In this document: positions 2,893 through 59,724 of the stretch, in pieces
Layout of the letters: each line of letters begins with the position of its first letter
Position numbering within the stretch: the first letter of the stretch is position 1
Assembly (NCBI GenBank): GCA_002269645.1
Contig: NIVC01000446.1
Coordinates: 186,001 to 250,000, forward strand
DNA from: Macrostomum lignano
Taxonomy: Eukaryota
Length of the DNA: 64,000 nucleotides
Reading direction: 5' to 3'
Notes under the pieces: generated by a model
The model's database searches: none
Told to the model about the DNA's origin: nothing
The model's input: the letters and a program-made list of their open reading frames with translations, nothing else
Translations under genes and position numbers: made by a program

Positions 2893-3235
2893 CTATGGTC
2901 AAAACACTGTCTATAGTAAAAACACTGTCTATGGTCAAAACACTGCATGTCTATGGTCAAAACACCGTCTATGGTCAAAACATAGCACGTCAATGGTCGA
3001 AACGCTGTCTATGGTCAAAACACTGTCCATGGTCAAAACACTGCATGTCTATGGTCAAAACACCGTCTATGGTCAAAACACTGTCTATGGTCAAAACACT
3101 GTCTATGGTCATAACACCGTCCATGGTCAAAACACCGTCTATGGTCAAAACACTGTCTATGGTCAAAATACCGTCTATGGTCAAAACACCGTCTATGGTC
3201 GAAACACTGTCTATGGTCAAAACACTACATGTCTA
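2893..3235. repeat. 18-bp minisatellite (TCTATGGTCAAAACACTG)
   Basis: Visible tandem units; source of the MVKTLS-repeat ORFs. Confidence 0.93.
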
Positions 3236-4047
3236 TAGACAAATGTCAAATGTCATCACGGTTGCTAAGAGTGCAGCCTGGTTTGCTCACACACTGCGAT
3301 TCCTGTCCCGCCACTTTGCCACAACTCGCCTGACCGGTCAGTCCGGAATATCGCGGCCAAACCCATCCGAAAAAATGCACAATTCCTTCGCCAGCAATGT
3401 TATGTTGCAAGATAAGCTAAGATTGACGCGAAGCAAAAAAAGAGTTGCACCAAAACGATTTGCTTGAAAGCGAACGGACTTATGAATTTCTGAAATGCTA
3501 AGGATTAAGAAAATTTTCGCCCCTGTTAGATGGTGGTAAAGAAATATTGTACATGTCTGCGATAAAGAAATAGCCAAGTATATTGGATGCACGCACAGCA
3601 TTGCACGAACTACAGACCCAACCCAATCCAGCCCCCCCCCACCTCATTTCAGAACCGATTCCCGACCGACCTACCACAGCAAAGTGATAGCTGTTGCTGT
3701 TTATTACGAAGTACGCAGCAGATCTGGCATAAATGTTTAGCTGTCCGAACCCTGCCCAGTTGCTGTTGACACTGACTGCAACCGGTTAGATAATTTATTT
3801 GGTTTTGACAGGCCAAACAGTCATCACTGGTAAGTCGCCTATGCATGTAGTTTCAATTGTAAATTATGAGCCGAACTATATAAAATTTTAAATACGAGTA
3901 TTAAATGTTACTTTCATAATTTTGTGAAAGCAATCTCTAATCAATTGCTGGTCGATTTTACAAGCTCGAAGTTATTCAAACGCTGAATTTCGCTTTAAAG
4001 TTGTGAGCTAGCAGAAGTTACTATGGCAATACCTTTTAAGCTTGCGA

Positions 4048-5989
4048 AGAGTCGAGCTTGTGAAGAATCGAGCTTGTGTGAAGAATCGAGCTTGTGTGAA
4101 GAATCGAGCTTGTGTGAAGAATCGAGTTGTGTGAAGAATCGAGCTTGTGTGAAGAATCGAGCTTGTGTGAAGAATCGAGCTTGTGTGAAGAATCGAGCTT
4201 GTGTGAAGAATCGAGCTTGTGAAGAATCGAGCTTGTGAAGAGTCGAGCTTGTGAATATTCGAGCTTGTGAATAGTCGAGCTTGTGAATAGTCGAGCTTGT
4301 GAAGAATCGAGCTTGTGTGAAGAATCGAGCTTGTGTAAAGAATCGAGCTTGTGAAGACTCGAGCTTGTGAAGACTCGAGCTTGTGAAGAGTCGAGCTTGT
4401 GAAGACTCGAGATTGTGAAGACTCGAGCTTGTGAAGACTCGAGCTTGTGAAGACTGGAGCTTGTGAAGACTCGAGCTTGTGAAGACTCGAGCTTGTGAAG
4501 ACTGGAGCTTGTGAAGACTCGAGCTTGTGAAGACTCGAGCTTGTGAAGAGTCGAGCTTGTGAAGACTGGAGCTTGTGAATAGTCGAGCTTGTGAAGAATC
4601 GAGCTTGTGTGAAGAATCGAGCTTGTGCAAAGAATCGAGCTTGTGAAGACTCGAGCTTGTGAAGACTCGAGCTTGTGAAGACTCGAGCTTGTGAAGAATC
4701 GAGCTTGTGAAGAATCGAGCTTGTGAAGAGTCGAGCTTGTGAAGACTCGAGCTTGTGAAGAATCGAGCTTGTGAAGACTCGAGCTTGTGAAGTTTCGAGC
4801 TTGTGAAGACTCGAGCTTGTGAAGACTCGAGCTTGTGAAGACTCGAGCTTGTGAAGTTTCGAGCTTGTGAAGACTCGAGCTTGTGAAGACTGGAGCTTGT
4901 GAAGACTCGAGCTTGTGAAGACTCGAGCTTGTGAAGACTCGAGCTTGTGAAGACTCGAGCTTGTGAAGAGTCGAGCTTGTGAAGAGTCGAGCTTGTGAAG
5001 ACTCGAGCTTGTGAAGACTCGAGCTTGTGAAGACTCGAGCTTGTGAAGTTTCGAGCTTGTGAAGACTCGAGCTTGTGAAGAATCGAGCTTGTGAAGAGTC
5101 GAGCTTGTGAAGACTCGAGCTTGTGAAGACTCGAGCTTGTGAAGACTCGAGCTTGTGAAGTTTCGAGATTGTGAAGACTCGAACTTGTGAAGACTCGAGC
5201 TTGTAAAGACTCGAGCTTGTGAAGAATCGAGCTTGTGAAGAGTCGAGCTTGTGAAGAATCGAGCTTGTGTGAAGAATCGAGCTTGTGAAGAGTCGAGCTT
5301 GTGAAGAGTCGAGCTTGTGAAGACTCGAGCTTGTGAAGAATCGAGCTTGTGAAGAATCGAGCTTGTGAAGACTGGAGCTTGTGAAGACTCGAGCTTGTGA
5401 AGACTGGAGCTTGTGAAGAGTCGAGCTTGTAAAGACTCGAGCTTGTGAAGAATCGAGCTTGTGAAGAGTCGAGCTTGTGAAGAATCGAGCTTGTAAAGAC
5501 TCGAGCTTGTGAAGAATCGAGCTTGTGAAGACTGGAGCTTGTGAAGACTCGAGCTTGTGAAGAGTCGAGCTTGTGAAGACTCGAGCTTGTGAAGAATCGA
5601 GCTTGTGAAGAGTCGAGCTTGTGAAGAATCGAGCTTGTGAAGAATCGAGCTTGTGAAGAACCGAGCTTGTGAAGACTCGAGCTTGTGAAGACTCGAGCTT
5701 GTGAAGACTCGAGCTTGTGAAGACTCGAGCTTGTGAAGACTCGAGCTTGTGAAGACTCGAGCTTGTGAAGACTCGAGCTTGTGAAGACTCGAGCTTGTGA
5801 AGAATCGAGCTTGTGAAGAATCGAGCTTGTGAAGAATCGAGCTTGTGAAGAATCGAGCTTGTGAAGAATCGAGCTTGTGAAGAATCGAGCTTGTGAAGAA
5901 TCGAGCTTGTGAAGACTCGAGCTTGTGAAGAATCGAGCTTGTGAAGAATCGAGCTTGTGAAGAATCGAGCTTGTGAAGAGTCGAGCTTA
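4048..5989 (+). repeat. 16-bp minisatellite (TCGAGCTTGTGAAGAC/GAA), about 1.9 kb
   Basis: Long visible tandem array; same family as 15390-17225 in the opposite orientation. Confidence 0.97.
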
Positions 5990-10757: not shown

Positions 10758-13700
10758 ATGAGACGATCTGGGCGCTACATTGGCCTATGCGGTGTTCTAT
10801 TACTGGTTGTGGCTCTAGCAGGAGCTACCAGCACTAGTAAGTTGTTATAATTACCATTAGCAGCCAATATCAGTCATATTTATCTAAACTAATCGAATAA
10901 TAAAACATAAATATCTTGGTTTTTAGAGAAAGCGGTACGGCTGCACCTGCGCAACTGCCGGCAGAGCTCTGACTACAACGGCATCTCGAGGTGCACCGGC
11001 GCTATCGATGGAAACACCAACCAGAGATGGACTATCCACGGTCACAGCACCACAAACCAGGATGCTCGACCGTGGTGGGAGACTCAAGTTGAGCAGCTGA
11101 CTTATTTCACTAAGGTGCGCATCTTCAACAGGCTGTACTGCTGTCCGGACAGGCTGACAAACTTTGTTATCAAGGTCGATGGCCACGTCTGCGCTCGGTA
11201 CAAGAGAAAGACGTCGTTCTCCGTGAAAGCGTTCAGCTGCAATCGGAAAGGTCGAATTCTACGAATTGAGAGCAGGATTCGCACGTTTCTGACGCTGGCG
11301 GAAGTCCAGGTGTACGGAGTGGCCATGGGACCAGCCACTGCAGCACGTAAGAGGGAGTCACACAAATAGAATGACGCTGGTATATACAATGAAAGTTCAT
11401 GGGGTTCGATTCTCGACCCTCTTGGAACAATTTTTGTCCTTGAGCAAGACACTTAACTCTGCATTGCTGTGAAATGGGTGCCAGCATCAGCTGGGGTAAT
11501 TGAGGGTGTGTGGCGACTTCCCAGTCCTTGGACTGAACAGCCGTACGCAGCCTTCAGATGCACCGCGCAATTGCTATCTAATCTGTCAATAGATTAAGTG
11601 TTCACCAGTAATTTATTTAATTCACCAGTAAAACTTTGGAATCCGTCACGAACTGGTTCATTTTTTAACCATTTTTCAGCGCCGATTCCCCTGTCTGACT
11701 GCGCTCAGAGCTCCAACTATTTGGGCCGATCCAAATGCACCGGGGCCATCGATGGCAACACCAAACAGCATTGGACTTTTACTGGCATGAGCACTACCAA
11801 CCGCGACCCGAGACCCTGGTGGCAAGCTCGCACCAAGGTGCCATCGAAGATCATGCAGGTTCGAATCTTCAACAGACTCGACTGCTGCCCGAATAGGCTC
11901 AACAAGTTCTTCATCAAAGTTGATGGCAAAGTCTGCGCCCAGTACAACAGCTTCGCTGCCTTCTCCGTGTGGACGTTCAACTGCAACAAAGTTGGCAGCG
12001 TTGTGCGAATCGAGAGCCGAAAAGCAACCTACCTGACACTGGCCGAGGTGCAGGTGTTTGGAGAGGCCTTGAAAACTGGCCGTATGTAGATTTTTATGAT
12101 AAAAAACTTAGTATATCTATTTATTGGGGCCTTTTATACAAGAGCAGATCAGCGTCTGAGTCTCGCGCCATCGAGATCCCTGGTTCGATTCCTTGCGTGG
12201 CCACATTAATTTCGAGCTTGTGTGCAATAATCATTTGCCCAATAGGCCAAGCCCCAAGGCACAAAGGGTGTAAAGAGCCGCTGTACACAAATGCGCGCCT
12301 GTGTACAGTATTGGCGCGCTTGTATTGTGCTCAGGAAGGTTGTGGGAGTCGATTAAGATTCTTCATTTTGACTAATCTTATGCCAATATTGAACTCAACT
12401 AATTTCAGCTCGACCAGTAAAGTTGCGCCTGAGAAACTGTCGTCAGAGCTCCGATTACAACGGCATCTCGCGGTGTACAGGAGCCATCGACGGAATCAAC
12501 AAGCGAGTTTGGTCGGCGGCAACTCAGAGCACGACTAACAACGATGCTAAGCCGTGGTGGGAGACTCAATTAGATGAGGCGACTCAGATTAAGAAGGTGC
12601 GCATCTTTAACAGGCGGGACTGCTGCCCGGAGAGGCTCAACAACTTCGTGATCAAGGTGGACGGTCGCGTGTGCGCTCGGTACCGCAGTTCGAAATCGTT
12701 TAAATCGAAAACATTCAAGTGCAACCGAAAAGGCCGGGTTATTCGCATTGAGAGTTTGAAGCGAACTTACCTGACTTTGGCTGAGGTGCAGGTGTTTGGA
12801 ATTATGCTGCCACAGACTAATGCGCAAGGTATGCTGGACTACTAGTTGCTACGAGCAATAAGTTTGAAAAATTCGAAATGTTGCCTTGTCAAACTCATCG
12901 AACCAATTTCAGGCCTGCTAAAGCTGTCCGACTGCTCGCAGAGCTCCAACTACAATTCGCGTCAAACGTGCTCAAAAGCTATCGATGGAGTCACGAGGCA
13001 GCGGCTGTCAGCCAGAGCTCCAATGGCCATCACTCGAAACGATGCCAACCCCTGGTGGGAGGCTCGAACCGAGGCACCCGCCAGGATCAACCGCGTCAGG
13101 ATCTTCAACCGGCAGGACTGCTGTCCCGAGAGGCTGGGAGACTTCGTCATCAAAGTCGACGACGAGGTCTGCGCTAGGTACAACAGCGGCCCGTTCTCCG
13201 TGTGGACGTTCGACTGCAACAAGTCGGGCAGGACTGTGCGAATTGAGAGCCGAAAGAGAACTTACCTGACACTGGCTGAGGTGCAGGTGTTCGGGAAGCT
13301 GCTGCCGCAGGAGGAAGCGGCGTGTAAGCAAAATGAATTGTCCTTTTTTGAACCATTGCCCATTTTTATGCAGGCACTTTCGCAAACTTGAATGCTATAC
13401 ACATTGGGAACAGGGAAAATTTGGGAATGTGATGGTCAGGCTTTGGAAAAGAGGGGGAGAGCAGAGATCATTTGGGGCTTGTGCGGGAAAATTGGCCTGA
13501 GTGTGCTACATGCCTGACGATCAGAAAGTCAGGACTGCTGTACCGTACACCCTGTGTGAGCGTGTGCATGAGCGCGTGCCTGCGTATACAGTATTAAAAC
13601 AAACTCCCAAATTCTCGTCCAAAACCAAAATTCTGTGTTATCTTCCTGTTAACCAGTGCACCCAGTCCGACTGAAGCTGCGCAACTGCCGGCAGAGCTCC

Positions 13701-16700
13701 GACTATCGCGGAAAGTCCCGCTGCACCGGGGCTATCGATGGAAACACCAACCAGAGATGGACTATCCACGGTCACAGCACCACTAACAATGACCGTCGCC
13801 CATGGTGGGAGGCCCAGACAGAACAGGTGACTCGATTCTCAAGGGTGCGCATCTTCAACAGGCTGTACTGCTGCCCGGACAGGCTGACAAACTTCGTTAT
13901 CAAGGTCGACGGTCAGGTATGCGCTCGGTACCACAGCAAAAGTTCGTTCAGCGTGAAATCTTTCAACTGCGACATGGATGGCAGGGTGCTGCGTATTGAG
14001 AGTTTGAAGCGAACCTATCTGACTCTGGCCGAGGTGCAGGTGTTTGGATTCGAGTATGGACCCACGTCGATGTCTTGTAAGTTGCGTGTCTTATGCTACA
14101 TTCTATCTATATAAAAACTATAGCTAGTTAGGCAAGTTAAGCGTAGTCGATCAGGGTTAGTACGCTCTGAGCTTGTTTGTTGCGACCCCTAAAGTGGGTG
14201 AGCTGCACAAGCCGCCTAGCAGACAACCCGCCTAGCTTCCATAATTTCAGGTCGGGTTTTCTAGATCACAAGTTATGCGAATTTATTCCTGTGTAGCTAG
14301 AGTCTTCTGAAGATTTTTTTGAAGAATATATGATAATAACCTCAGGAACAGCAACGCCAACCTCTAGGCTCCTAACTTGGGGGCCTACTCAGAACTTTTC
14401 ATTTCTCAGAAGGGGATTTAGCACCAGGGGCGCCAGCACCAGGGGCGCCAGCACCAGGGGCGCCAGCACCAGGGGCGCCAGCACCAGGGGCGCCAGCACC
14501 AGGGGCGCCAGCACCAGGGGCGCCAGCACCAGGGGCGCCAGCACCAGGGGCGCCAGCACCAGGGGCGCCAGCACCAAGGGCGCCAGCACCAAGGGCGCCA
14601 GCACCAGGGGCGCCAGCACCAGGGACGTCAGCACCAGGAGCGCCAGCACCAAAGGGCACCAAAGCTACTGCAAGGGGTCCCATATGTTTAACCAGTCAGG
14701 AGCGCGGCCCCCTTGCCCCCTAGCTTTGCCTCTGCCTGTACTCCAACTGTCACAGGGTACAGAAGTTAAGCAAAGCGATTGGTGATTCACCTGCCCTAAG
14801 ACTTCATCAACCGGTTGGTAACAACAATGCCACGACAGTTAACTACACTTTTGAATGCTCGCGCTTCCTTCATACATCAATAGTCTGTTGCTGAGTCAAT
14901 GCTAAATTGTGAATGTAAACCAACCAAACTGCAGCCCAGTTGCGCCTGTCCAAGTGCCAGCAGAGCTCCAACTATCGTGGCAAATCATTCTGCACTGGTG
15001 CAATTGACGGAAACTTAAAGCAGAGCTGGACCATCAGCGGCATGAGCACTACTCAACTGGACCAGCGTCCTTGGTGGCAGGCTCAGACAGACAAGCCGTC
15101 TTACATCGCCCAAGTTCGAATCTTCAATCGGCAGGACTGCTGTCCGAACAGGCTGGACAATTTTGTTATCAAAGTTGACAACGCCATCTGCGCCGAGTAC
15201 AAGGGCGGCCCGTTCTCCGTGTGGACTCTGGACTGCAACATGATTGGCAGCGTTGTGCGAATCGAGAGCCGCAAGAGAACCTACCTGACTCTGGCTGAGG
15301 TGCAGGTGTTCGGAGAGCCTGCTAGTGAGTTATTGACGGAGCAATTGTTTGTACAAGTTTGTCTCGAACTATTGTAGGCATCGTGTCACTTTCACAAGCT
15401 CGATTCTTCCCAAGCTCAAGTCTTCCCAAGCTCAAGTCTTCACAAGCTCGATTCTTCCCAAGCTAGATTCTTCCCAAGCTCGAGTCTTCCCAAGCTCGAG
15501 TCTTCCCAAGCTCGAGTCTTCACAAACTCGATTCTTTACAAGCTCGACTCTTCACAAGCTCGATTCTTCACACAAGCTCGATTCTTCCCAAGCTCAAGTC
15601 TTCACAAGCTCGATTCTTTACACAAGCTCGATTCTTCACACAAGCTCGATTCTTCACAAGCTCGATTCTTCACAAGCTCGACTATTCACAAGCTCGAATA
15701 TTCACAAGCTCGACTCTTCACAAGCTCGATTCTTTACACAAACTCGATTCTTCACAAGCTCGATTCTTCACAAGCTCGATTCTTCACAAGATCGATTCTT
15801 CACACAAGCTCGATTCTTCACACAAGCTCGATTCTTCACACAAGCTCGATTCTTCCCAAGCTAGATTCTTCCCAAGCTCGAGTCTTCCCAAGCTCGAGTC
15901 TTCACAAGCTCGATTCTTTACAAGCTCGACTCTTCACAAGCTCGATTCTTCCCAAGCTCAAGTCTTTACAAGCTCGACTCTTCACAAGCTCGATTCTTCC
16001 CAAGCTCAAGTCTTCACAAGCTCGATTCTTCCCAAGCTAGATTCTTTACAAGCTCGACTCTTCACAAGCTCGATTCTTCACAAGCTCGAAACTAGACAAG
16101 CTTGATTTTTCACAAGCTCGATTCTTCACAAGCTCGATTCTTCACAAGCTAGATTCTTCCCAAGCTCGAGTCTTCCCAAGCTCGACTCTTCACAAGCTCG
16201 ATTCTTCCCAAGCTCAAGTCTTCACAAGCTTGATTCTTCCCAAGCTAGATTCTTCCCAAGCTCGAGTCTTCCCAAGCTCGAGTCTTCACAAGCTCGATTC
16301 TTTACAAGCTCGACTCTTCACAAGCTCGATTCTTCACAAGCTCGATTCTTCACAAGCTCGAGTCTTCACAAACTCGATTCTTTACAAGCTCGACTCTTCA
16401 CAAGCTCGATTCTTCCCAAGCTCAAGTCTTCACAAGCTCGATTCTTTACACAAGCTCGATTCTTCACACAAGCTCGATTCTTCACAAGCTCGATTCTTCA
16501 CAAGCTCGACTATTCACAAGCTCGAATATTCACAAGCTCGACTCTTCACAAGCTCGATTCTTCCCAAGCTCGATTCTTCACAAGCTCGATTCTTCACAAG
16601 CTCGATTCTTCACAAGATCGATTCTTCACACAAGCTCGATTCTTCACACAAGCTCGATTCTTCACACAAGCTCGATTCTTCCCAAGCTAGATTCTTCCCA

Positions 16701-22216: not shown

Positions 22217-27021
<4,805 letters not shown>

Positions 27022-27064
27022 GGTCTGCTGACTGCTGAAATTATTTAGATGGCAAAAGTTGTCT

Positions 27065-27660
<596 letters not shown>

Positions 27661-29204
27661 ACTATCGATCTCATAGATACAACTCAAACAACTCACGACA
27701 GCTCTAGCCTGAGAAGTGTGTGGGAACGCGGTTAAAATGGCGTGATTAAGTGCAGCAGTGCGAGACAGCGTGAACTGAGACCCCTAGGCAAAATTTACTG
27801 TTTCAAGCAGAGACAGAGAGAATGCTCTTTCACAGAGAGCTCTTGGCTATATAGCCAGGGCAAGCCACTTCGAGCTGGGCTCGCGGTTGTCACAGTGCAA
27901 ACTATTCTGGTATGATCGTGGAGCTCAAATTAAACAATAATATTAAAAACCATTGGCATGAGAGGCAGAAATCTAGATAGAGAAAATTTGTTCAAACAGC
28001 ACCTTTGCAATCCGAAAACGCCTTAGAGAAGGCGCACAAGTAGTTCCAAATTGGAGAAAGAAGAGATAGACTCAAACAATAGAACGGCATTCCTATGAAT
28101 AGCATTCTCCGCAGAAGCTACAGAGGTACAAAGGCACCCATTCAACCGTCTGACGTGAACTCTACCTAAATTTATATCGAGCCACTCGTCTTTCCACTAT
28201 AGCCGAAAAACTTCTCCCTCAAAAGAGGCTGCCCTGCACACTTGCCCAGAACAGCAATGAGCAGCCCAGGCGGCACGGGCCAATAGAGGACTTGGCAGAA
28301 ACTGCATGGCGGGTTCTGCATGGGCGCGGGCCAAACACTACAGAGCGACAGGGCCAACCCCAAGTGCGGAACAGAACACGGGCTGACTTTTTGTTGCGCA
28401 CCTTCTCAAACAAGAATCAAGTCGCCAGCCCTCCAGATATCCAGATATTTGACGATTCTGCCAGAAGGTCGGATTTTTTCTATAGGCGCCAGTGCAGTAC
28501 ACCCCTGTGCGCCTATCAGCTCTGCGCCTCAGGACACCCTGACACTTCTCAAGTTTCACTGATCAAGACTCGACAGTGAGCAAGCCTCGACTGCCGGACA
28601 TTCTGAGCTAAGTCTCTCAAGCATTTAGTCATCACCCGGCGATTTCCAGGTGCACCAGGAAGGGGAACTCCCCCCTCTCTTGGTAGTTCTTCTGTTAAAC
28701 GTATATTAAATAAGCAATCGGATTTTCTACCACAGTGAAGCTTACTGACAATATACGGATGTTTGCTTCTGAAAGTACCGCTTGCAGTGCTTCATTCCAG
28801 TAGTTATTAGAAGCTTCCTTCAAGCCAATTTCCAAATGCTCAAACATGTGCAGGTATGCACCACTCCCCCCATACAGCCCACAGCATCAGTCAGTCTCTC
28901 ACTGAGAAGCCTGAAAAGGCTGAAAAGCCACCCGCATCGTGTTGGCCAGGATGTGAATTTTATCATTCATTTTAATCATCCCTGCTAACTCATATCGCTG
29001 CACAGTTTATGACTGTTGAGGCACACGCGCGAAACGTGGACAGGCACTGGAGCTAACATCCCACTACCAAACCCGCTGCTTGATGGGTCAGCTGCTTCTC
29101 TCCCTATGCACTCGCCTGTGCATGCAGATGCTGCATAAAAGCGGCTCAGAAAATGCCATTGTCAGATAGCTGCAGTCATCTTTTTTAGCTTAGGAAAACA
29201 GTTG

Positions 29205-43700: not shown

Positions 43701-45942
43701 AGCCAACAGCCTCAATGACCTCCACGAGTTCGCGGCGCAGTCCGGCCTCTGACCAGTTGCGCAAGGGCCTGGGAATTTTGCCGCCCTTAGTTGAGATGCT
43801 GAAATCTTCGCGAAATATTCGCCAATCGCGTTCGGTCATCTCGTCCAGGCCTTTGGCCGACCAGTGACGATCGTCGAACTTTTGACGCGCCTCGCGATTT
43901 AAGATATGATCGAGGCGCTTCTCCTCTTGAGCTTTCTGGGCGTCCGAGCGGCGGTCTTCCAGCAGCTTGGAGTAGAACCGGCCCATCTCCTTGCGCTGGG
44001 TCTTCACGTCAATGCCGGCCAGGTGACCCCGGCCGAATAGTTGCACCTGGGGTGTGAAATGGGGTGGCGGTTTAGCGATAGTTGCACCTGGGGTGTGATA
44101 TGGGGTGGCGGTTTAGCGATAGTTGCACCTGGGGTGTGATATGGGGTGGCGGTTTAGCGATAGTTGCACCTGGGGTGTGATATGGGGTGGCGGTTTAGCG
44201 ATAGTTGCACCTGGGGTGTGATATGGGGTGGCGGTTTAGCGATAGTTGCACCTGGGGTGTGATATGGGGTGGCGGTTTAGCGATAATTGCACCTGGGGTG
44301 TGATATGGGGTGGCGGTTTAGCGATAATTGCACATGGGTGTGATATGGGGTGGCGGGATGGCTATAATTGCACCTGGGTGTGATATGGGGCGGCGGGATG
44401 GCTATAATTGCACCTGGGGTGTGATATGGGGTGGCGGGATGGCTATAATTGCACCTGGAGTGTGATATGGGGTGGCGGGATGGCTATACTTGCACCTGGG
44501 TGTGATATGGGGTGGCGGGATGGCTATAATTGCACCTGGGTGTGATATGGGGAGGTGGGATGGCTATAATTGCACCTGGGGTGTGATATGGGGAGGTGGG
44601 ATGGCTATACTTGCACCTGGGTGTGATATGGGGTGGCGGGATGGCTATAATTGCACCTGGGGTGTGATATGGGGTGGCGGGATGGCTATAATTGCACCTG
44701 GGTGTGATATGGGGAGGTGGGATGGCTATAATTGCACCTGGGGTGTGATATGGGGAGGTGGGATGGCTATACTTGCACCTGGGTGTGATATGGGGAGGTG
44801 GGATGGCTATAATTGCACCTGGGGTGTGATATGGGGTGGCGGGATGGCTATACTTGCACCTGGGTGTGATATGGGGTGGCGGGATGGCGATAATTGCACC
44901 CGGGGTGTGATATAGGGCGGCGGGTTGGACAGTTAAACGTGGGACCAGCGGTGGCGTCAAAAATTGCAACTCTCAATTGACTACCGATATGTAGCGTAGT
45001 AAACAATAAGCTGAAATTCACCTGGTGCTTATCCTTATACAAGTTGTTATAATCCTGACTAGTATCCTCTGTGGCGTCCCATTCGAACACAAACTTTCGC
45101 TCGTTCTGCCTGCGCTGCTTCTTTCTAGGCTTCTTGCCGCCCAAATAGCGCTCGCGAATCGCTTCCAACACGCGACTGTCCGTCCCTGCGTCTCCGACTC
45201 CGCCCCGGTCCCGGCCTCGATCCCGGTCCCGATCGCGATCCCGATCACGATCACGACCACGGTCCCGGTCTCGATCTCCTCGACGGTCGCGGTCGCGGTC
45301 CCGATCCCGATCGCGGTCCCGATCCCGATCGCGGTCCCGATCCCGATCGCGGTCTCGATCCCGCCTGTCCGCCAGCTGCTGGTCCTGCTGCGCCTGCAAC
45401 TGCTGAGCCCGCATCATTTCCACCTGTTCCGCTCGCCTCTTCAAAGCTTCCGCCGCCCTCTCCTCCTTGGTGAGAAACTTCGGCTTGGCCTGCTCAGCTT
45501 CCAAAGCTTTCTTACGGGCCAGCACCTCTTCCAGACTCAGCGGCCCGGCTTTCTTTGCCGCCTGTTTGTCGTCATCTGCTGTCTTCTGCTTTTGCGACGA
45601 CTCGGCAGCAGACTCCGCCTCCTGCTGCTGGTCGGCGCTGCTCGATTTCTTAGATGCTTCTTTTTCTTTACGACGGCGTTTTCCGTCCGCCGCGTCGCGA
45701 TCTCGACTGCGGCTCCGGCTGCGATTGCGGCGCTTCTTCTCGCGCTTCTCTTTCTTCTCCTTCTTCTCCTTTTTTTCTTTTTTCTCTTTCCGACTCTTTG
45801 AAGTTGTTGCCGATGTTGCCTCGGGCTTTTCTTGCGCTGTAGCCGCCGCTTCTTCAGGCGGGGGCGGCTGCTGCTGCGACGGCGCCCTTGGCGAAGATGG
45901 TTGAGCACTGTCAACGTCCATTGAGTCGCCGTCGCTGGTCAT
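40757..45942 (-). CDS. DDX23: U5 snRNP DEAD-box helicase DDX23/Prp28, about 828 aa
   Basis: Exons (minus) 45942-45022, 44046-43399, 42370-41831, 41134-40757; all phase 0. RS/RD-rich N-terminus, [80 protein letters not shown]. An upstream in-frame ATG at 45999 is an alternative start. Confidence 0.96.
41195..41800. repeat. GGGAGCTT-core minisatellite (about 37-bp units decaying to about 20-bp units) in DDX23 intron 3
   Basis: Visible tandem units. Confidence 0.9.
42510..43360. repeat. 21-bp minisatellite (TCATTGAGTAGGGATATGGGA) in DDX23 intron 2
   Basis: Visible tandem units. Confidence 0.96.
44037..44915 (-). repeat. 40-41-bp minisatellite whose unit contains the 3' splice site plus the first 10 exon bases (CACACCCCAG|GTGCAACTAT)
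   Basis: Plus-strand unit ATAGTTGCACCTGGGGTGTGATATGGGGTGGCGGTTTAGCG, about 21 copies; the terminal unit overlaps the real acceptor at 44047. Confidence 0.95.
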
Positions 45943-46065
45943 TATCACCTTTTTGCCTACTGCTGAAATTTGTTGCGGCGAGAATTTTTGCATATTCATC
46001 TACTGTTAGTAGACTGTTGGAGACAGTATTGCAGATAAATTATGTCTGATTTTGTTATGGATAGA

Positions 46066-46229
46066 AATATCTATCTTTCTATCTATCTGTCTATCTATCT
46101 ATCTATTTATCTGTCTGTCTGTCTGCCTATCTATCTGTCTATCTATCCATCTATCTGTCTATCTATCTATCTATCTGTCTATCTATCTATCTATCTATTT
46201 ATTTATCTATCTATTTATCCATCTATCTG

Positions 46230-46297
<68 letters not shown>

Positions 46298-46685
46298 CCA
46301 ATCAATCTATTTATCTGTCTGTCTGCCTATCTATCTGTCTATCTATCTATCTATCTGTCTATCTATCTATCTATCTGTCTATCTATCTGTCTATCTATCT
46401 ATCTATCTATCTGTCTATCTATCTATCTATCTGTCTATCTATCTATCCATACATGCGCAACCTCCAAAATTTGGTCGGCCGTGCGACTTACATGTGAATG
46501 AAAATGGCATAACGCAATTTTGGGTAGACGGCAGGAGTAACTATGACTGTCTTATAAGGGCTAAATGCCTCGTCATAAAATTAGTACTACGTCTGTGTTT
46601 TTTGGGCTGGGCATTTTTGCGACTTACCTTGGTTGGCCGCCAAATCGGTCGGCCGGATCGGCCGACTGTTGCGCATGTATGTATG

Positions 46686-51444: not shown

Positions 51445-52469
51445 GATGTTTTTGTAACACAGATTCGATCAGTTTTTTGGGAGTTTTGTCTACAGTTTCT
51501 TCTGAAATAATTAAGAATTAGAAAACTAGTTAGTAAACTATAATATATTTGTGCCATTTAATGCAATAGACAGTCATTAATTATTTAAATAAACTTTACT
51601 AAATAGCCAGATACTAGCTCGTATAATAGCTAGATGGGCCACTCGAGCAAGTTTGCTTATAAGCTACTTTCAGTTCAGTAGTAAGTTAAACAGAGGCATT
51701 TTAATGCATTTTTAAAGCCAGTGCTCATTTATTGGCTCTTAGCCCCAGCTTAAACCCTCCAACCGCGCCTTTCCCCGCCTCGTCCTAATTTTTATTGCCT
51801 TTCTCGGAATTCCAGCCTAAAGCGGCCATGTACATTTCAGTGGACTGGCCAATGTACATTATTTCTGAACCAATTAGCAAGTTGTTTACGCCTGCAAGCT
51901 TGGGCTTCTAAACTTATTAAAGTAATCCCAGCTGCCTTTATTATAAAATAGCTTATATATTCTTCTTTGCTACTGAACTGTAAGTAGAAAGCTGTTTTAT
52001 TAAGTATATATGCCTGAGTGGGCTCACTTAGTATAGATATTCTAGTTATGTGCTAATAACTAATCAGATTCATAGACAAGCGCCCTTTCCACTGAAACTT
52101 GAGCAGGCAACACTAAATCTATCCTAAGTCTTATTTACGAGCATATTAGCAAAATAAGTTTATCGAACAATAACACACAAATAAGACGGTTTCTAATTCT
52201 GCCCTTGTATTTACAAGCGCGCAAAAAAGTCTAGGCAAGGATCGCCACTAGAAGTTACCGTTGTATCATAGGATGCAGCACGCCTAAAATTGTAAAAATT
52301 ATTCGAAGGCTTTCATGTTTACGTGTATGGTGTATATAGCGATGCTTGCCTTCAAAAGAAGCATTCTATTAGACTGTTATAAAGAAACCCGCACTTGCAA
52401 TAACTTTTTTTACGATTCTTGTCTTGCTAACGGTTTCAACGGGCTTTAGCTGTTTATTAGAGTTATGTG

Positions 52470-52670
52470 AGGGTTGTCGACTTGTGTTAAGAGCGTCGGA
52501 CTCACGACTTTGAAGGTCGGGGGTTCGATTCCCGATTCCACTGGGCAAGAAACTTAACTTTGGTACCAGCATTAGCTGGGGTAATTGAAGGTGTGTGTGG
52601 CGACTCCGCAGTCCTTGGACTGAACAGCCGTACGCAGCCTTCAGATGCGCCGCGCAATAGCTGCGGCTGA
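52470..52670 (+). mobile_element. tRNA-derived SINE, family A
   Basis: tRNA-like head GTTAAGAGCGTCGGACTC...GGGGGTTCGATTCCC; body shared with 11398-11575. Confidence 0.78.
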
Positions 52671-52868
52671 GCTGTCGGTTGCACATCTGCCCAATAGGGC
52701 AGGTGTAGTTATCAATATTATTATTAAAGATATCTTACTACCCTATGCTATATTATTTGATAGAAAACTAAAAATTAGATCATGGCTGAATAGCTGGAAT
52801 CGCCCTGCAATAACTTTGGTAACTTCTAGTGGTCTTTAAAACCAAGATTAGCAGTGGCAAAACAAGCT

Positions 52869-53741
52869 TCACAAAGCGCTATTCAGATAGTCAACAAACA
52901 GTTCAGTAACAGCGGCAGCATCAGTAGCCGCAGCAGCCGTGGCCGGTCTAGACCTCAGGCCAGTTAGAAACTGTTTCCTGCAGCGTTGCAATTCGCCCAT
53001 AGTCAGCTGCCTAGTATAGGTGAGCCTGCGCTTACACCCGGCAATGATGAGTTCGTCGCCTGGCAGGGCACCAGTCTGAGCAGCCATCACCCGTTGCATA
53101 ACGTCGCGCGTCGCTGCGTCGAAATTCGGCAGAAAATCGGAAGCAGCTGACGGCCTAGACTGAGTGGATTGGTTAGGCCGATCCGGCGCTCGATTGAACA
53201 GCGCCTGGCACACATTCGAGCATTGTAACGGTTCCGCGTTAGGTGCCAGAACTAGAGGCGAATCCCAACGATTAGTGGCATTTGGCTCTTCAAATCTTGC
53301 GCACAATTGGTCGAATAGATCCTCAGGATAGCGATCCTCTACAGGCCGTTGAGCGTTCCAACTTTTAGCCGTTTCTGGCGACACGTCGCAATGTATAAGG
53401 CATTGAGTATGTCTGAGATGCTTCACAGAGCAGTACAGTTCGTATCTGTAGCCTTTGATATAGTTTAACGAATCTAATATTACAACATCAGTTGGTGATG
53501 CCGCTAAGCGTTGTTCAGTTTCAGATTTCAAACACGAGCGCGCCTCTTTTTCGGCCGCGGCGCCAGCATAGATGGCGGTCTTGACTGCGGCGCCAGCTGT
53601 GGTAGAGCCGGATACACAGATCGATTCGTCTATGAGGCTGACCCGACGATCCGGGAACTTAACTGACAGGTACTCGATCAGCTGACGAGCTCGAGTCGAC
53701 TTGCCCGATGAGGGAAGTCCGCAAAGCAGGACCAGTGGCAG
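52869..53741 (-). CDS. KTI12: KTI12 (Elongator-associated P-loop protein), intronless; CTG occupies the initiator position
   Basis: Frame from 53741: (L)PLVLLCGLPSSGKSTRARQL...DSLNYIKGYRYELYC...RFEEPNATNRWDSPL; 873 nt including stop. KTI12 orthologs begin MPL[VI]. Confidence 0.92.
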   Translation of the reverse strand: MPLVLLCGLPSSGKSTRARQLIEYLSVKFPDRRVSLIDESICVSGSTTAGAAVKTAIYAGAAAEKEARSCLKSETEQRLAASPTDVVILDSLNYIKGYRYELYCSVKHLRHTQCLIHCDVSPETAKSWNAQRPVEDRYPEDLFDQLCARFEEPNATNRWDSPLVLAPNAEPLQCSNVCQALFNRAPDRPNQSTQSRPSAASDFLPNFDAATRDVMQRVMAAQTGALPGDELIIAGCKRRLTYTRQLTMGELQRCRKQFLTGLRSRPATAAAATDAAAVTELFVDYLNSAL

Positions 53742-53774
53742 AAGTGAGTAGGGTGTAGCCGGTAGGTGAGGGTA

Positions 53775-54465
53775 GTGGCCATAGACTAATCGGATTCCTA
53801 TATATATACAGAAGCTGGGGTTGTGGTCATAGATTAATCGGATACGTATATACAGCTAGCAGCTAGGGTTGTGGCCATAGACTAATCTGAGTCGTATATA
53901 CAGCTAGCAGCTGGGGTTGTGGCCATAGACTAATCGGATACGTATATAAAGCTAGCAGCTGGGGTTGTGGCCATAGACTAATCTGAGTCGTATATACAGC
54001 TAGCAGCTGGGGTTGTGGCCATAGACTAATCGGATACGTATATAAAGCTAGCAGCTGGGGTTGTGGCCATAGACTCATTGGATACGTATATACAGCTAGC
54101 AGCTGGGGTTGTGGCCATAGACTCATTGGATACGTTTATACAGCTAGCAGCTGGGGTTGTGGCCATAGACTAATCGGATACGTATATAAAGCTAGCAGCT
54201 GGGGTTGTGGCCATAGACTCATTGGATACGTTTATACAGCTAGCAGCTGGGGTTGTGGCCATAGACTAATCGGATACGTATATACAGCTAGCAGCTAGGG
54301 TTGTGGCCATAGACTAATCGGATTCCTATATATATACAGAAGCTGAGGTTGTGGCCATAGACTAATCTGAGTCGTATATACAGCTAGCATCTGGGGTTGT
54401 GGCCATAGACTAATCGGATACGTATATAAAGCTAGCAGCTGGGGTTGTGGCCATAGACTAATTGA
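53775..54465. repeat. 48-bp minisatellite with GGGTTGTGGCCATAGACTAAT core, immediately upstream of KTI12
   Basis: Visible tandem units; core shared with 47360-48122. Confidence 0.95.
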
Positions 54466-58200: not shown

Positions 58201-59610
58201 TGCCGGCCACCGTTGGCCGGTGCAGTCCCGCTAGGCAGGCGTCAATTCGAGTCTCGAACAGGGTGCCCACGGCAACGCCGGCTATGGCGCCGTAGATGTT
58301 CGGCCGGTTTTTGGCCACCTTGGGTCGGTCGAATACACTGCTACCGCTGGCAGCGGCTGCTCGGCGGGCTCGGCGACTGCCGCCTGGGGGCCGGAGGGGG
58401 GGGGTTGAGACAGCGGATTAAAGAGACTATTGTACTAGCGAAGGATTCACACCTGTGTAATTTAACGATTCAAAACTGGTCCATACACTGTAGATTCACA
58501 CCTGGTCACACATTTGTGAGATTCACACCTGGTCACACATCTGTGAGATTTACACCTGGTCACACTATAAGATTCACACCTGGTCACACATTTGTGAGAT
58601 TCACACCTGGTCACACTATAAGATTCACACCTGGTCACACATCTATAAGATTCAAACCTGGTCACACTATAAGATTCACACCTGGTCACACATCTATAAG
58701 ATTCAAACCTTGTCACACTATAAGATTCACACCTGGTCACACTAAAAGATTCACACCTGGTCACACATCTATAAGATTCACACCTAATTTCAGTATAAGA
58801 ATCAAACTAAATCATTATATAAGATTTACACTAGGTCACAAATCTAAGATTCACACTAGGTCACAAATCTATAAGATTCACACTAGGTCACAAATCTATA
58901 AGATTCACACTAGGTTACAGATCTATAAGATTCACACTAGGTCACTAAAATATTCACTTTAAGTCACATGTATAAGATTCAGTCCAGTCCACTGCAAGAC
59001 GCACAGCGCCCACCGTAAGATTCACACTAAATACGAGCTAGGCCTAAACTAGCTAAAAATCACACAAATAGATAGCATGTAAGACACCTCAGCAGCCTTC
59101 CATCTACTACTCACCGCCCTCGCCATCGCTGTCCTCATCTTTGCTGTCGTACTCATCATCATCGTCGTCAGAGCCGCGACCGCGCCGACCCGACGACGGC
59201 ACCCAGTTCTCCTCGCCGCTGTCGTCTTTGCCGTAGCCGTCGCACTGGCCAATGTACTGCGGCGCCGGCCGGCCCTCAAGCCTGCGACTCGACCGCCTGG
59301 GCGCTTCGTCGAGTTCAGCCGCCAAACGGCGAGCTAAAACGGCGTCGGAATCGGCGTCCTGGACAGCTTCGGGCTCGCCGGCTGCATCAGATGATCGGCT
59401 GACAGGTTTCGGCTTGTTAGACTGTCGGCGATTCTTATTATTAGAGATCAAAGACTGCCGCTTCTTAGACGCCGCAGCCGTTGGCAGCTTAGAAATCGAA
59501 GGCTTTGTCCATCGTTTCGGTGGCGAATTTAAAGCGCCGAGTTCGCCAAGAATGCGCCGATTTTCGGCGAGATTTTTCAGACGACGCTGTTCGTATTCGC
59601 TTAGAGACAT
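55275..59610 (-). CDS. Stand-alone SRA/YDG-domain protein (UHRF1-type SRA without UBL/TTD/PHD/RING), about 594 aa
   Basis: Exons (minus) 59610-59115, 58383-57918, 56983-56511, 55624-55275; phases 1/2/1 consistent, 1785 nt. SRA motifs HRPTVAGIHG, SIALSGGYEDDIDLG..FTYTGEGGRDL, VRVIRG, RYDGLYRV, FKRLPDQAPAPW. The exon 3 donor (GTAAAA) is the weakest part of the model. Confidence 0.9.
55695..56455. repeat. 23-bp minisatellite (TTGCTATGCAGCTTGGTAACCTG) in SRA intron 3
   Basis: Visible tandem units. Confidence 0.94.
57050..57900. repeat. 36-bp minisatellite (GGAAAAATCATGTAGCTGGGATAATTGGCGATAATG) in SRA intron 2
   Basis: Visible tandem units; 12-aa period in the ORF track. Confidence 0.95.
58490..58990. 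repeat. 24-27-bp minisatellite (AGATTCACACCTGGTCACACTATA) in SRA intron 1
   Basis: Visible tandem units. Confidence 0.92.
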
Positions 59611-59724
59611 GGCTTATTAGCATGCAATGATGGATGAATGTGCGATTGTAGCTAAGGTTGGTGTAACAACAAGTACTGAATGAATTTAAATTGAACCATT
59701 TATTCTGAAGCCTAAATCAAATCT

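What the first reader, a model, noticed from the sequence alone, without database searches (positions are those of the whole stretch)
53735..53790. KTI12 has no AUG: pyrimidine tract + CTG sits where an SL-donated AUG would complete MPLV
Seen (minus strand): ...CACCCTACTCACTTCTG|CCA CTG GTC CTG CTT TGC GGA. CTG occupies the Met position, a roughly 35-nt C/T-rich tract precedes it, and the nearest ATG (53782, last minisatellite unit) is out of frame and ends after 34 codons. Knowledge: KTI12 begins MPL[VI]; flatworm SLs end in AUG that can initiate translation. Inference: the site looks like a 3' splice site (TTCTG for TTCAG); trans-splicing there yields exactly AUG-CCA-CUG-GUC. Options: non-canonical UG acceptor, A>T error or variant of CAG, CUG initiation (poor context), or dead copy.
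Basis: partly seen in the sequence, partly recalled or inferred. Interest (0 to 1): 0.75.

Follow-up and report, generated by a model that had tools for sequence, protein, structure and literature searches.

The report
Flatworm KTI12 borrows its start codon
In the flatworm Macrostomum lignano the KTI12 gene has no start codon of its own and almost certainly gets its AUG from the trans-spliced leader, a known flatworm trick; the odd CTG at the splice site is most likely an error written into the assembly when it was polished with RNA-seq reads.

Summary
The window is Macrostomum lignano assembly Mlig_3_7. An intronless KTI12 gene lies on the minus strand (53738..52869). CTG sits exactly where Met should be, and there is no in-frame ATG in the 40 open codons upstream. 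A second genomic copy has the same sequence.

GenBank annotates both copies as 5'-partial proteins starting at 'PLVLL'. In this assembly transcripts were cut at mapped trans-splice sites, so the mRNA 5' end lies at 53738-53740. The species' 35-nt leader ends in ATG. Leader plus exon reads M-P-L-V, the N-terminus of 139 of 161 homologues. The two copies differ by 7 synonymous and 2 non-synonymous changes (dN/dS 0.09), so the gene is under selection and not dead.

The site CTTCTG is the published acceptor motif [T/C]TNCAG with A replaced by T. T is also the leader's base at that offset. The assembly was polished with RNA-seq reads. At the neighbouring gene's acceptor one copy reads ATTGCATG (leader 3' end) where the other reads ATTCCCAG. 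I therefore favour a polishing artefact of a true CAG (about 0.7) over a real UG acceptor (about 0.15).

I could reach no transcript or DNA reads, so this split is unresolved.

The parts
52869..53738 (-). Intronless KTI12 coding sequence from codon 2 (CCA) to the stop TGA (52871-52869). It encodes 289 residues and is annotated in GenBank as a 5'-partial protein.
   Evidence: Pfam PF08433 E=1.3e-73 with full profile coverage. It is 100% identical to annotated protein P0001, which starts 'PLVLLCG'. The other copy's protein is PAA54849.1, 'BOX15_Mlig019088g1, partial'.
53739..53741 (-). CTG in the position of the missing initiator codon. The T at 53740 is the base in question (NIVC01000446.1 position 239740, calculated).
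   Evidence: Sequence. Identical in the second copy, L002.
53739..53744 (-). CTTCTG, the published M. lignano trans-splice acceptor motif [T/C]TNCAG with T instead of A at position -2.
   Evidence: Sequence. Motif from PMC8629364.
53741..53775 (-). Pyrimidine-rich (74% C/T) 3' end of the presumed outron.
   Evidence: only 1.5% of 35-nt windows reach this pyrimidine content.
53697..53720 (-). Intact Walker A / P-loop, GLPSSGKS. It would be lost if splicing or initiation moved downstream.
   Evidence: Translation. The next downstream AG would start the exon at 53699, which removes the P-loop.
53678..53782 (-). Out-of-frame 34-codon ORF from the nearest upstream ATG. It overlaps the KTI12 start and would interfere with any initiation on an mRNA that had not been trans-spliced.
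   Evidence: There are 21 ATGs in the 800 nt upstream.
53770..54462 (.). 48-bp minisatellite directly upstream of the acceptor: 14.4 copies here and about 7 in the other genomic copy.
   Evidence: TRF.
59621..59628 (-). ATTGCATG, the last 8 nt of the leader, sitting in the assembly exactly where the other copy has the acceptor ATTCCCAG. It lies 10 nt before the ATG of the upstream SAD_SRA (UHRF1-like) gene. This is the local precedent for leader bases being written into the assembly.
45963..45968 (-). Control: canonical acceptor TTTCAG of the DDX23 gene. The annotated 5'-partial CDS (from 45960) begins at the first in-frame codon after it.
   Evidence: DDX23 identity.

Best explanation
This is the M. 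lignano KTI12 gene. KTI12 is an Elongator-associated P-loop ATPase. The gene is single-exon, sits in a same-strand gene cluster, and is present in two diverged copies in the assembly.

Its pre-mRNA is SL trans-spliced immediately before CCA (53738). The 35-nt spliced leader, which ends in AUG, supplies the initiator codon, so the mRNA reads ...UUGC-AUG|CCA-CUG-GUC and encodes MPLVLLCGLPSSGKS... The gene has no start codon of its own.

The non-AG dinucleotide (TG) at the acceptor is most likely not biological. The assembly was polished with Pilon using RNA-seq reads. Leader-bearing reads overhanging the acceptor carry T at position -2. I infer that they converted a true CTTCAG acceptor into CTTCTG in both copies.

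What is shown:
- the sequence, the two identical copies and the annotated CDS start;
- the leader sequence and the acceptor motif (literature);
- RNA-seq polishing (literature);
- leader bases at a neighbouring acceptor;
- purifying selection.

What is inferred:
- that leader-to-KTI12 junction reads exist;
- that the true genomic base is A.
For: Transcript start.
- P0001 and P0121 are annotated 5'-partial and start at Pro2.
- The annotation cut transcripts at sites where leader-trimmed reads mapped, then ran TransDecoder (PMC5730564).
- The frame is open for 40 codons upstream, so a partial ORF beginning at CCA means the transcript begins at 53738-53740.
- Control: the DDX23 5'-partial CDS begins 2 nt after a canonical TTTCAG.

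Leader.
- It ends in ATG.
- All reported flatworm leaders do, and this AUG can initiate translation (Cheng 2006, as cited in PMC12582326).
- PMC10468722 describes the final ATG of the Macrostomum leader as the translation start codon.

Reading frame.
- Leader plus exon translates MPLVLLCGLPSSGKSTRARQ.
- 139 of 161 homologues start MP[LF][VI].
- The only AGs nearby would start the exon 47 nt upstream (out of frame) or 39 nt downstream (P-loop lost).

Gene is alive.
- The two copies differ at 9 of 870 nt: 7 synonymous and 2 non-synonymous.
- dN/dS is 0.09, binomial P=0.0013. Non-coding mismatch between the copies is 2.8% and dS is 3.3%.

Artefact.
- CTTCTG differs from the motif [T/C]TNCAG only at -2, and T is the leader's base there.
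- At the SAD_SRA gene, L001 reads ATTGCATG| where L002 reads ATTCCCAG|. All three clustered differences go towards the leader. A rough chance estimate is about 5e-5 for the 7 acceptor copies inspected.
Against: - I could retrieve no leader-to-KTI12 read, no DNA-only read and no independent assembly. Both the junction and the true base are therefore inferred.
- The artefact model has a weak point. At KTI12 only position -2 is changed, in both copies, while -3 to -8 also differ from the leader and were left alone.
- With a soft-clipping aligner the T would never be aligned, because the match score never recovers after -1. So end-to-end mapping is required. The paper states that mode for its transcriptome mapping, not explicitly for polishing.
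- Even with end-to-end mapping, changing -2 alone needs RNA and DNA evidence to be nearly balanced.
- The DDX23 acceptor, which mismatches the leader in a similar way, was not altered in either copy.
- The local precedent is a single site. It could in principle be a biological footprint, namely gene conversion by cDNA of a trans-spliced mRNA.
Confidence: 0.65

Rival explanations
1. The TG is real. KTI12 is trans-spliced at a constitutive, sole UG 3' splice site, recognised through the intact upstream CTTC context, and the leader AUG still initiates translation.
For: - Both assembled copies, about 3% diverged at silent sites, carry TG, and both are under purifying selection.
- The annotated transcript start sits exactly there.
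- TG is the non-AG 3' splice site validated in 36 human genes, where it also has a pyrimidine at -3 (PMC2374985).
- From my own knowledge, not read here: Aroian et al. 1993 (Mol Cell Biol) found that C. elegans can splice at acceptors whose AG has been mutated.
- A single changed base is what a point mutation gives. It is harder to get from read-overhang polishing.
Against: - In humans TG sites are never the sole acceptor. They need an AG within 28 nt, and AG>TG mutants shift splicing to neighbouring AGs. Here the nearest AGs are 47 nt up and 39 nt down.
- The substituted base is exactly the leader's base, in an assembly polished with RNA-seq.
- An unambiguous leader-derived overwrite sits about 5.9 kb away in the same locus.
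- For a gene whose only AUG depends on exact splicing, an acceptor mutation should be strongly selected against.
Confidence: 0.15
2. The leader-like bases are biological footprints. cDNA copies of trans-spliced mRNAs recombined with their genes and carried the leader's last bases (TG here, GCATG at the SAD_SRA gene) into the genome.
For: The SAD_SRA acceptor in L001 matches the leader for 8 nt, while L002 keeps CAG. KTI12 is intronless, as a gene converted from cDNA would be.
Against: - There is no longer leader sequence and no poly(A) remnant at KTI12.
- From my own recollection, not checked here, KTI12 is also intronless in humans, so the lack of introns says little.
- The documented RNA-seq polishing explains the same pattern without a new mechanism.
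- It would still leave a non-AG acceptor to be explained.
Confidence: 0.05
3. KTI12 is translated from the genomic CUG, or another non-AUG codon, on an mRNA that is not trans-spliced.
For: CTG occupies the Met position. CUG is the commonest non-AUG initiator in eukaryotes (general knowledge).
Against: - The context is poor: C at -3 and C at +4.
- An unspliced leader region would carry 21 upstream ATGs in 800 nt. One is an overlapping 34-codon out-of-frame ORF.
- The annotated transcript does not include the CTG as a codon.
Confidence: 0.03
4. Dead or decaying copy: a start-codon mutation (ATG>CTG) in a pseudogene.
For: There is no ATG. The gene sits next to an expanding minisatellite.
Against: - The 289-codon frame is intact in both copies, with full-length Pfam coverage and an intact P-loop.
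- dN/dS is 0.09, P=0.0013.
- These two copies are the only M. lignano KTI12 proteins the search returned.
Confidence: 0.03
5. An upstream coding exon with an in-frame ATG is cis-spliced onto this site.
For: The frame is open for 40 codons upstream. A few homologues in the database carry N-terminal extensions.
Against: - The acceptor would be the same non-AG site.
- The annotated transcript starts at CCA in both copies.
- 139 of 161 homologues begin directly at MPL[VI].
- The upstream open frame runs through minisatellite units that differ between the copies.
Confidence: 0.03

Closest known systems
[quoted passage not shown]
   Same: The leader ends in AUG. The recipient gene lacks its own AUG at the conserved N-terminus. 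The junction puts the leader AUG in frame, directly before codon 2 of a conserved protein.
   Different: This is a different species, a free-living macrostomorph; from memory, Cheng et al. worked with Schistosoma, and I could not read that paper here. No experimental junction or protein data were available to me. The assembly shows TG instead of AG at the acceptor.
M. lignano SL trans-splicing as annotated by the TBONE pipeline (Wudarski 2017, PMC5730564; Ustyantsev & Berezikov 2021, PMC8629364)
   Same: The 35-nt leader and the acceptor motif [T/C]TNCAG at the exon-outron junction. The gene is conserved and sits in a same-strand cluster. The repeat-adjusted distance to the upstream gene is 844 nt, below the paper's 1-kb operon threshold.
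   Different: Position -2 of the motif is T. Neither paper, in the parts I read, discusses genes that depend on the leader AUG or non-AG trans-splice sites.
TG 3' splice sites in U2-type introns (Szafranski et al. 2007, PMC2374985)
   Same: TG in place of AG, with a pyrimidine at -3.
   Different: Human TG sites are only alternative sites, paired with an AG within 28 nt. Here no AG lies within 39 nt, the site would be the sole one, +1 is C rather than a purine, and the reaction is trans-splicing.
Assembly errors introduced by short-read polishing (Pilon) with spliced RNA-seq reads
   Same: The bases changed are those where reads overhang a splice boundary. The new bases equal the sequence on the other side of the junction, here the leader.
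   Different: I know of no published description of leader sequence being written into trans-splice acceptors. Here it is inferred from one clear site and one single-base site.

Membership tests
KTI12 (PF08433), Elongator-associated P-loop ATPase | Full-length match to the family profile | tested here: met
   E=1.3e-73, profile positions 2-271 of 271. 38-43% identity over about 100% of the length to annotated metazoan KTI12 proteins.
KTI12 (PF08433), Elongator-associated P-loop ATPase | N-terminal Walker A motif GxxxxGK[ST] directly after MPL[VI] | tested here: met
   PLVLLCGLPSSGKS. 139 of 161 homologues start MP[LF][VI]. Only the Met codon is missing from the DNA.
Gene whose initiator AUG is donated by the flatworm spliced leader | The species has a spliced leader ending in AUG | tested here: met
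   The contig is M. lignano. The leader is ...TTATTGCATG, followed by GTAAG in the SL RNA gene.
Gene whose initiator AUG is donated by the flatworm spliced leader | No genomic in-frame AUG able to give the conserved N-terminus | tested here: met
   No in-frame ATG between the stop 40 codons upstream and CCA, in both copies. The first internal Met is about residue 225.
Gene whose initiator AUG is donated by the flatworm spliced leader | Trans-splice site mapped immediately before codon 2, in frame | tested here: inconclusive
   Indirect only. The 5'-partial CDS starts at CCA in both copies, in an annotation built from leader-read peaks, with the DDX23 site as a control. I did not see the reads themselves.
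Gene whose initiator AUG is donated by the flatworm spliced leader | Canonical AG acceptor at the junction | tested here: not met
   The assembly reads CTTCTG| in both copies. I judge this most likely a polishing artefact, but as the sequence stands the feature fails.
Gene whose initiator AUG is donated by the flatworm spliced leader | Leader-to-mRNA junction reads, and a protein starting with Met-Pro | not testable with these tools
   No Macrostomum transcripts in the searchable collections.
Functional TG 3' splice sites (Szafranski 2007) | TG used as an alternative to an AG no more than 28 nt away | tested here: not met
   The nearest AGs would start the exon 47 nt upstream or 39 nt downstream. 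Rule.
RNA-seq polishing artefact at a trans-splice acceptor | The assembly was polished with RNA-seq reads | tested here: met
   PMC5730564, Methods, 'Genome assembly'.
RNA-seq polishing artefact at a trans-splice acceptor | The deviant base equals the leader base at the same offset | tested here: met
   At -2 the leader has T and the acceptor consensus has A.
RNA-seq polishing artefact at a trans-splice acceptor | The same kind of overwrite is seen at other acceptors of the assembly | tested here: met
   One clear case: the SAD_SRA gene, L001 ATTGCATG| versus L002 ATTCCCAG|. I could not make a genome-wide count.
RNA-seq polishing artefact at a trans-splice acceptor | DNA-only reads show A at the site | not testable with these tools
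   No read data or independent assembly could be reached.

The most novel reading that the evidence does not exclude
The TG is real. An essential, conserved gene whose only start codon comes from the spliced leader is trans-spliced constitutively at a sole UG 3' splice site with no AG within 39 nt. That would break the rule, drawn from human data, that TG acceptors work only beside an AG. It would also show that 3' splice-site definition in this flatworm can rest on the upstream YTNC context alone.
Probability: 0.15. Interest if true: 0.7.

Novelty: new member of a known kind. Interest (0 to 1): 0.3.

Why it matters
Biologically this is one more clean example of a gene that depends on the leader's AUG. 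Initiation from the flatworm leader AUG is established (Cheng 2006, as cited in PMC12582326), and the Macrostomum literature already treats the final ATG as a start codon. That part is ordinary.

The practical point may matter more to users of the genome.

- Mlig_3_7 was polished with RNA-seq in a species where about a third of genes are trans-spliced, so leader bases may have been written into acceptor sites.
- That would create false non-AG acceptors and false differences between copies.
- It could also be one reason why only 9,551 of 21,754 trans-splice regions matched the acceptor motif (PMC8629364).
- It may mislead gene prediction and the design of promoters or reporter constructs.
- Gene predictors that require an ATG will miss or truncate genes like this one. 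No second M. lignano KTI12 from any other annotation appeared in the search.

If the TG turned out to be real, it would be a rare natural case of a sole non-AG acceptor.

Tried and rejected
Direct transcript evidence. All of these found nothing.
- A search with the N-terminal 111 residues for Macrostomum fragments found nothing above 51% identity.
- An exact look-up of the Met-initiated 290-residue protein was not on record.
- A scan of JGI metagenome contigs for the 5' 44 nt gave 0 hits.

Published gene tables.
- No paper mentions 'Mlig019088'.
- Supplements of PMC8629364, PMC12582326, PMC5730564 and PMC5816591 hold neither that name nor KTI12.

More copies or loci.
- The third protein search, with SAD_SRA exon 1, returned one UniRef protein (source assembly not stated) that has no contig on record.
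- Look-ups of two window ORFs were not on record.
- I therefore could not make a wider survey of trans-splice sites. I also could not compare flatworm orthologues, because the best 120 hits are all from other phyla.

Other checks.
- There is no SL RNA gene in the window, allowing up to 3 mismatches.
- Counts of leader 3' k-mers in the window are not above chance. The second TTGCATG (26256) lies inside a carboxylesterase intron.
- A scan for clusters of differences between the two copies mostly picked up misaligned tandem repeats.
- Rfam and ARAGORN found nothing relevant near the gene.
- JBC 2006 (Cheng et al.) is not held, so I cite it through PMC12582326.
- I dropped the ALG13-like gene as a second control because its CDS start can be read in more than one way.

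Full report
**What is in the sequence**

On the minus strand the window reads ...ccctactcacttCTG|CCA CTG GTC CTG CTT TGC GGA... The CTG is at 53741-53739. From CCA (53738) an open frame of 289 codons runs to TGA at 52871-52869. It matches Pfam KTI12 over the whole profile, E=1.3e-73, and has an intact P-loop, GLPSSGKS.

The frame stays open for 40 codons upstream, to a TAG at 53858, with no in-frame ATG. The nearest ATG (53782) is out of frame and opens a 34-codon ORF. The 35 nt before the TG are 74% pyrimidine, which only 1.5% of 35-nt windows of the 64-kb window reach. A 48-bp minisatellite (53770-54462) abuts this tract.

**Where the window comes from**

- The protein search found one 100%-identical protein, P0001. 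It has 289 residues and starts 'PLVLLCG' with no Met.
- It lies on NIVC01000446.1 of GCA_002269645.1. A second cluster member, PAA54849.1, is named 'hypothetical protein BOX15_Mlig019088g1, partial [Macrostomum lignano]'.
- The window is therefore the Mlig_3_7 assembly of a free-living flatworm.
- The second copy lies on NIVC01002851.1, in a locus with the same gene order: Glyco_tran_28_C, SAD_SRA, KTI12, ankyrin, DDX23, all on one strand.
- The 38 nt before CCA, including CTTCTG, are identical in the two copies. The minisatellite differs: 14.4 copies against about 7.
- All other homologues are at most 43% identical and come from other phyla. I could make no comparison within flatworms.

**Is the gene alive?**

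The two copies differ at 9 of 870 coding positions. Seven changes are synonymous and two are not: dS 0.033, dN 0.003, dN/dS 0.09. The binomial P for at most 2 non-synonymous changes out of 9 is 0.0013. Non-coding mismatch in the flanks is about 2.8%. Both copies have therefore been under purifying selection since they split, and a dead copy is unlikely. With its first internal Met near residue 225, the protein can only be made if translation starts at or next to the CTG position.

**Where the mRNA starts**

- The annotation of this assembly did not guess transcript 5' ends. Reads containing the spliced leader were trimmed and mapped, and the peaks were used to cut transcripts. ORFs were then called with TransDecoder (PMC5730564).
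- Because the frame is open upstream, a 5'-partial ORF that begins exactly at CCA means the transcript begins at 53738-53740. This holds in both copies.
- A control in the same locus behaves as expected. The DDX23 gene in this copy is annotated 5'-partial, and its CDS begins at the first in-frame codon, 2 nt after a canonical TTTCAG.

**The leader**

- The leader is CGGTCTCTTACTGCGAAGACTCAATTTATTGCATG, followed by GTAAG in the SL RNA gene (PMC8629364; PMC5173321).
- Joined to the exon it reads AUG CCA CUG GUC, which translates MPLVLLCGLPSSGKS.
- Of 161 KTI12 homologues fetched, 139 begin MP[LF][VI] and 7 more have that motif after an extension.
- The only AG dinucleotides nearby would start the exon 47 nt upstream, which is out of frame, or 39 nt downstream, which is in frame but removes the P-loop.
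- All reported flatworm leaders end in AUG, and that AUG can provide the start codon (Cheng 2006, cited in PMC12582326). PMC10468722 states that the Macrostomum leader likely contains the final ATG, which it labels the translation start codon.
- I therefore rate the leader-donated AUG at about 0.9. It rests on annotation and sequence logic, not on reads I could see.

**The TG**

The published trans-splice acceptor motif is [T/C]TNCAG, sitting right at the junction. The site here is CTTCTG, so only the A is replaced.

Two facts point to a technical cause.

- The Methods say the Canu assembly 'was polished with Pilon v. [quoted passage not shown] In a species where about 30% of genes are trans-spliced, reads that overhang an acceptor carry leader bases. 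At -2 the leader has T.
- The same locus holds a clear overwrite. Ten nt before the ATG of the SAD_SRA gene, this copy reads CCATCATTGCATG|CTAATAAGCC where the other copy reads CCACCATTCCCAG|CTAATAAGCC. The three clustered differences (-2, -3, -5) all turn an ordinary CAG acceptor into the last 8 nt of the leader. A rough chance estimate is 8e-6 per site, or about 5e-5 for the seven acceptor copies I looked at. These are also exactly the mismatches that lie inside the stretch (-1 to -8) where leader and outron are similar enough for an aligner to extend through (this reading of aligner behaviour is my inference).

**Limits of the artefact reading**

- At KTI12 only -2 is changed, although -3 to -8 also differ from the leader.
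- A soft-clipping alignment would stop at -1, so it would never present the T. The model therefore needs end-to-end mapping. The paper states that mode for its transcriptome mapping, not for the polishing step.
- Even then, RNA and DNA evidence would have to be nearly balanced at this site.
- DDX23, which mismatches the leader in a similar way, was left intact in both copies.
- The precedent is one site. It could instead be biological: gene conversion by cDNA of a trans-spliced mRNA.

Against a real UG acceptor stands what is known from humans. TG 3' splice sites occur only as alternatives to an AG within 28 nt, never as the sole site. AG>TG mutations move splicing to neighbouring AGs (PMC2374985). 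A strongly conserved gene whose only AUG depends on exact splicing is a poor place for such a change to persist in two copies.

My weighting:

| Explanation of the TG | Probability |
|---|---|
| Polishing artefact of a true CAG | about 0.7 |
| Real TG, however it arose | about 0.15-0.2 |
| CUG initiation, pseudogene or upstream exon, together | under 0.1 |

**Context**

The SAD_SRA stop (55275) is 1,537 nt from the junction. That is 844 nt after subtracting the minisatellite, which is under the 1-kb repeat-adjusted threshold that PMC8629364 uses for operons. KTI12 may therefore be a downstream gene of an operon. This is inference only.

**Comparison and verdict**

The gene works like the leader-AUG-dependent mRNAs reported by Cheng et al. 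2006. As the assembly stands it fails one defining feature, the AG acceptor. It also fails the rule for known functional TG acceptors. It is a new example of a known mechanism, and it already sits unremarked in GenBank as a 'partial' protein. The odd base is probably an assembly error with an identifiable cause. Interest is low to moderate. The useful by-product is the warning that Mlig_3_7 may carry leader-derived bases at trans-splice acceptors.

Noticed in passing
window 59608-59628 (minus strand); L001 4116-4131 versus L002 3227-3242: At the start of the SAD_SRA (UHRF1-like) gene, this copy has the leader's last 8 nt, ATTGCATG, where the other copy has the acceptor ATTCCCAG. A fourth difference, at -10, also goes towards the leader. 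This looks like leader sequence written into the assembly, or into the genome.
   Followed up: partly
window 44037-44928: Intron 1 of the DDX23 gene is filled by a 41-bp minisatellite of 22 copies. Each unit repeats the real 3' splice site plus the first 10 nt of exon 2 (CACACCCCAG|GTGCAACTAT), which gives about 22 decoy acceptors upstream of the one used. The KTI12 minisatellite likewise abuts its acceptor.
   Followed up: partly
window 53770-54462 versus L002 9595-9969: The 48-bp minisatellite upstream of KTI12 has 14.4 copies in one genomic copy and about 7 in the other. Each unit carries an ATG and several AGs.
   Followed up: partly
window 45958-45968 (minus strand): At the DDX23 trans-splice site the leader AUG would be followed by CAG UAG. 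That is a two-codon upstream ORF ending 16 nt before the gene's own ATG. At the SAD_SRA gene the leader AUG opens an out-of-frame ORF that overlaps the start. So the leader AUG is in frame for only one of the three genes here.
   Followed up: no
window about 52440-52700 (between KTI12 and the ankyrin gene): A stretch whose plus strand looks by eye like the 3' half of a tRNA (GGTCGGGGGTTCGATTCCCGATTCCA), possibly a SINE or tRNA relic. ARAGORN and Rfam found no tRNA. The two copies differ by a cluster of 3 substitutions here.
   Followed up: partly
window 2895-4630, 14330-14785, 27049-27735, 46042-46497, 58213-58962: Many long ORFs in the window are just translated tandem repeats, for example SIYLSIYL... 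and GASTRGAST... The locus is very rich in minisatellites, which also made whole-locus alignment of the two copies unreliable.
   Followed up: no
window 11598-14114 (plus strand) and 23131-26609 (minus strand): Other genes in the window are a multi-exon gene with several F5/8 type C (discoidin) domains and a carboxylesterase-family gene with canonical GT-AG introns.
   Followed up: no
window 42869-63738 = L001; L002: Five genes (ALG13-like Glyco_tran_28_C, SAD_SRA, KTI12, ankyrin-repeat, DDX23) lie on the same strand in both copies. The repeat-adjusted gap before KTI12 is under 1 kb, so part of this may be an operon.
   Followed up: no
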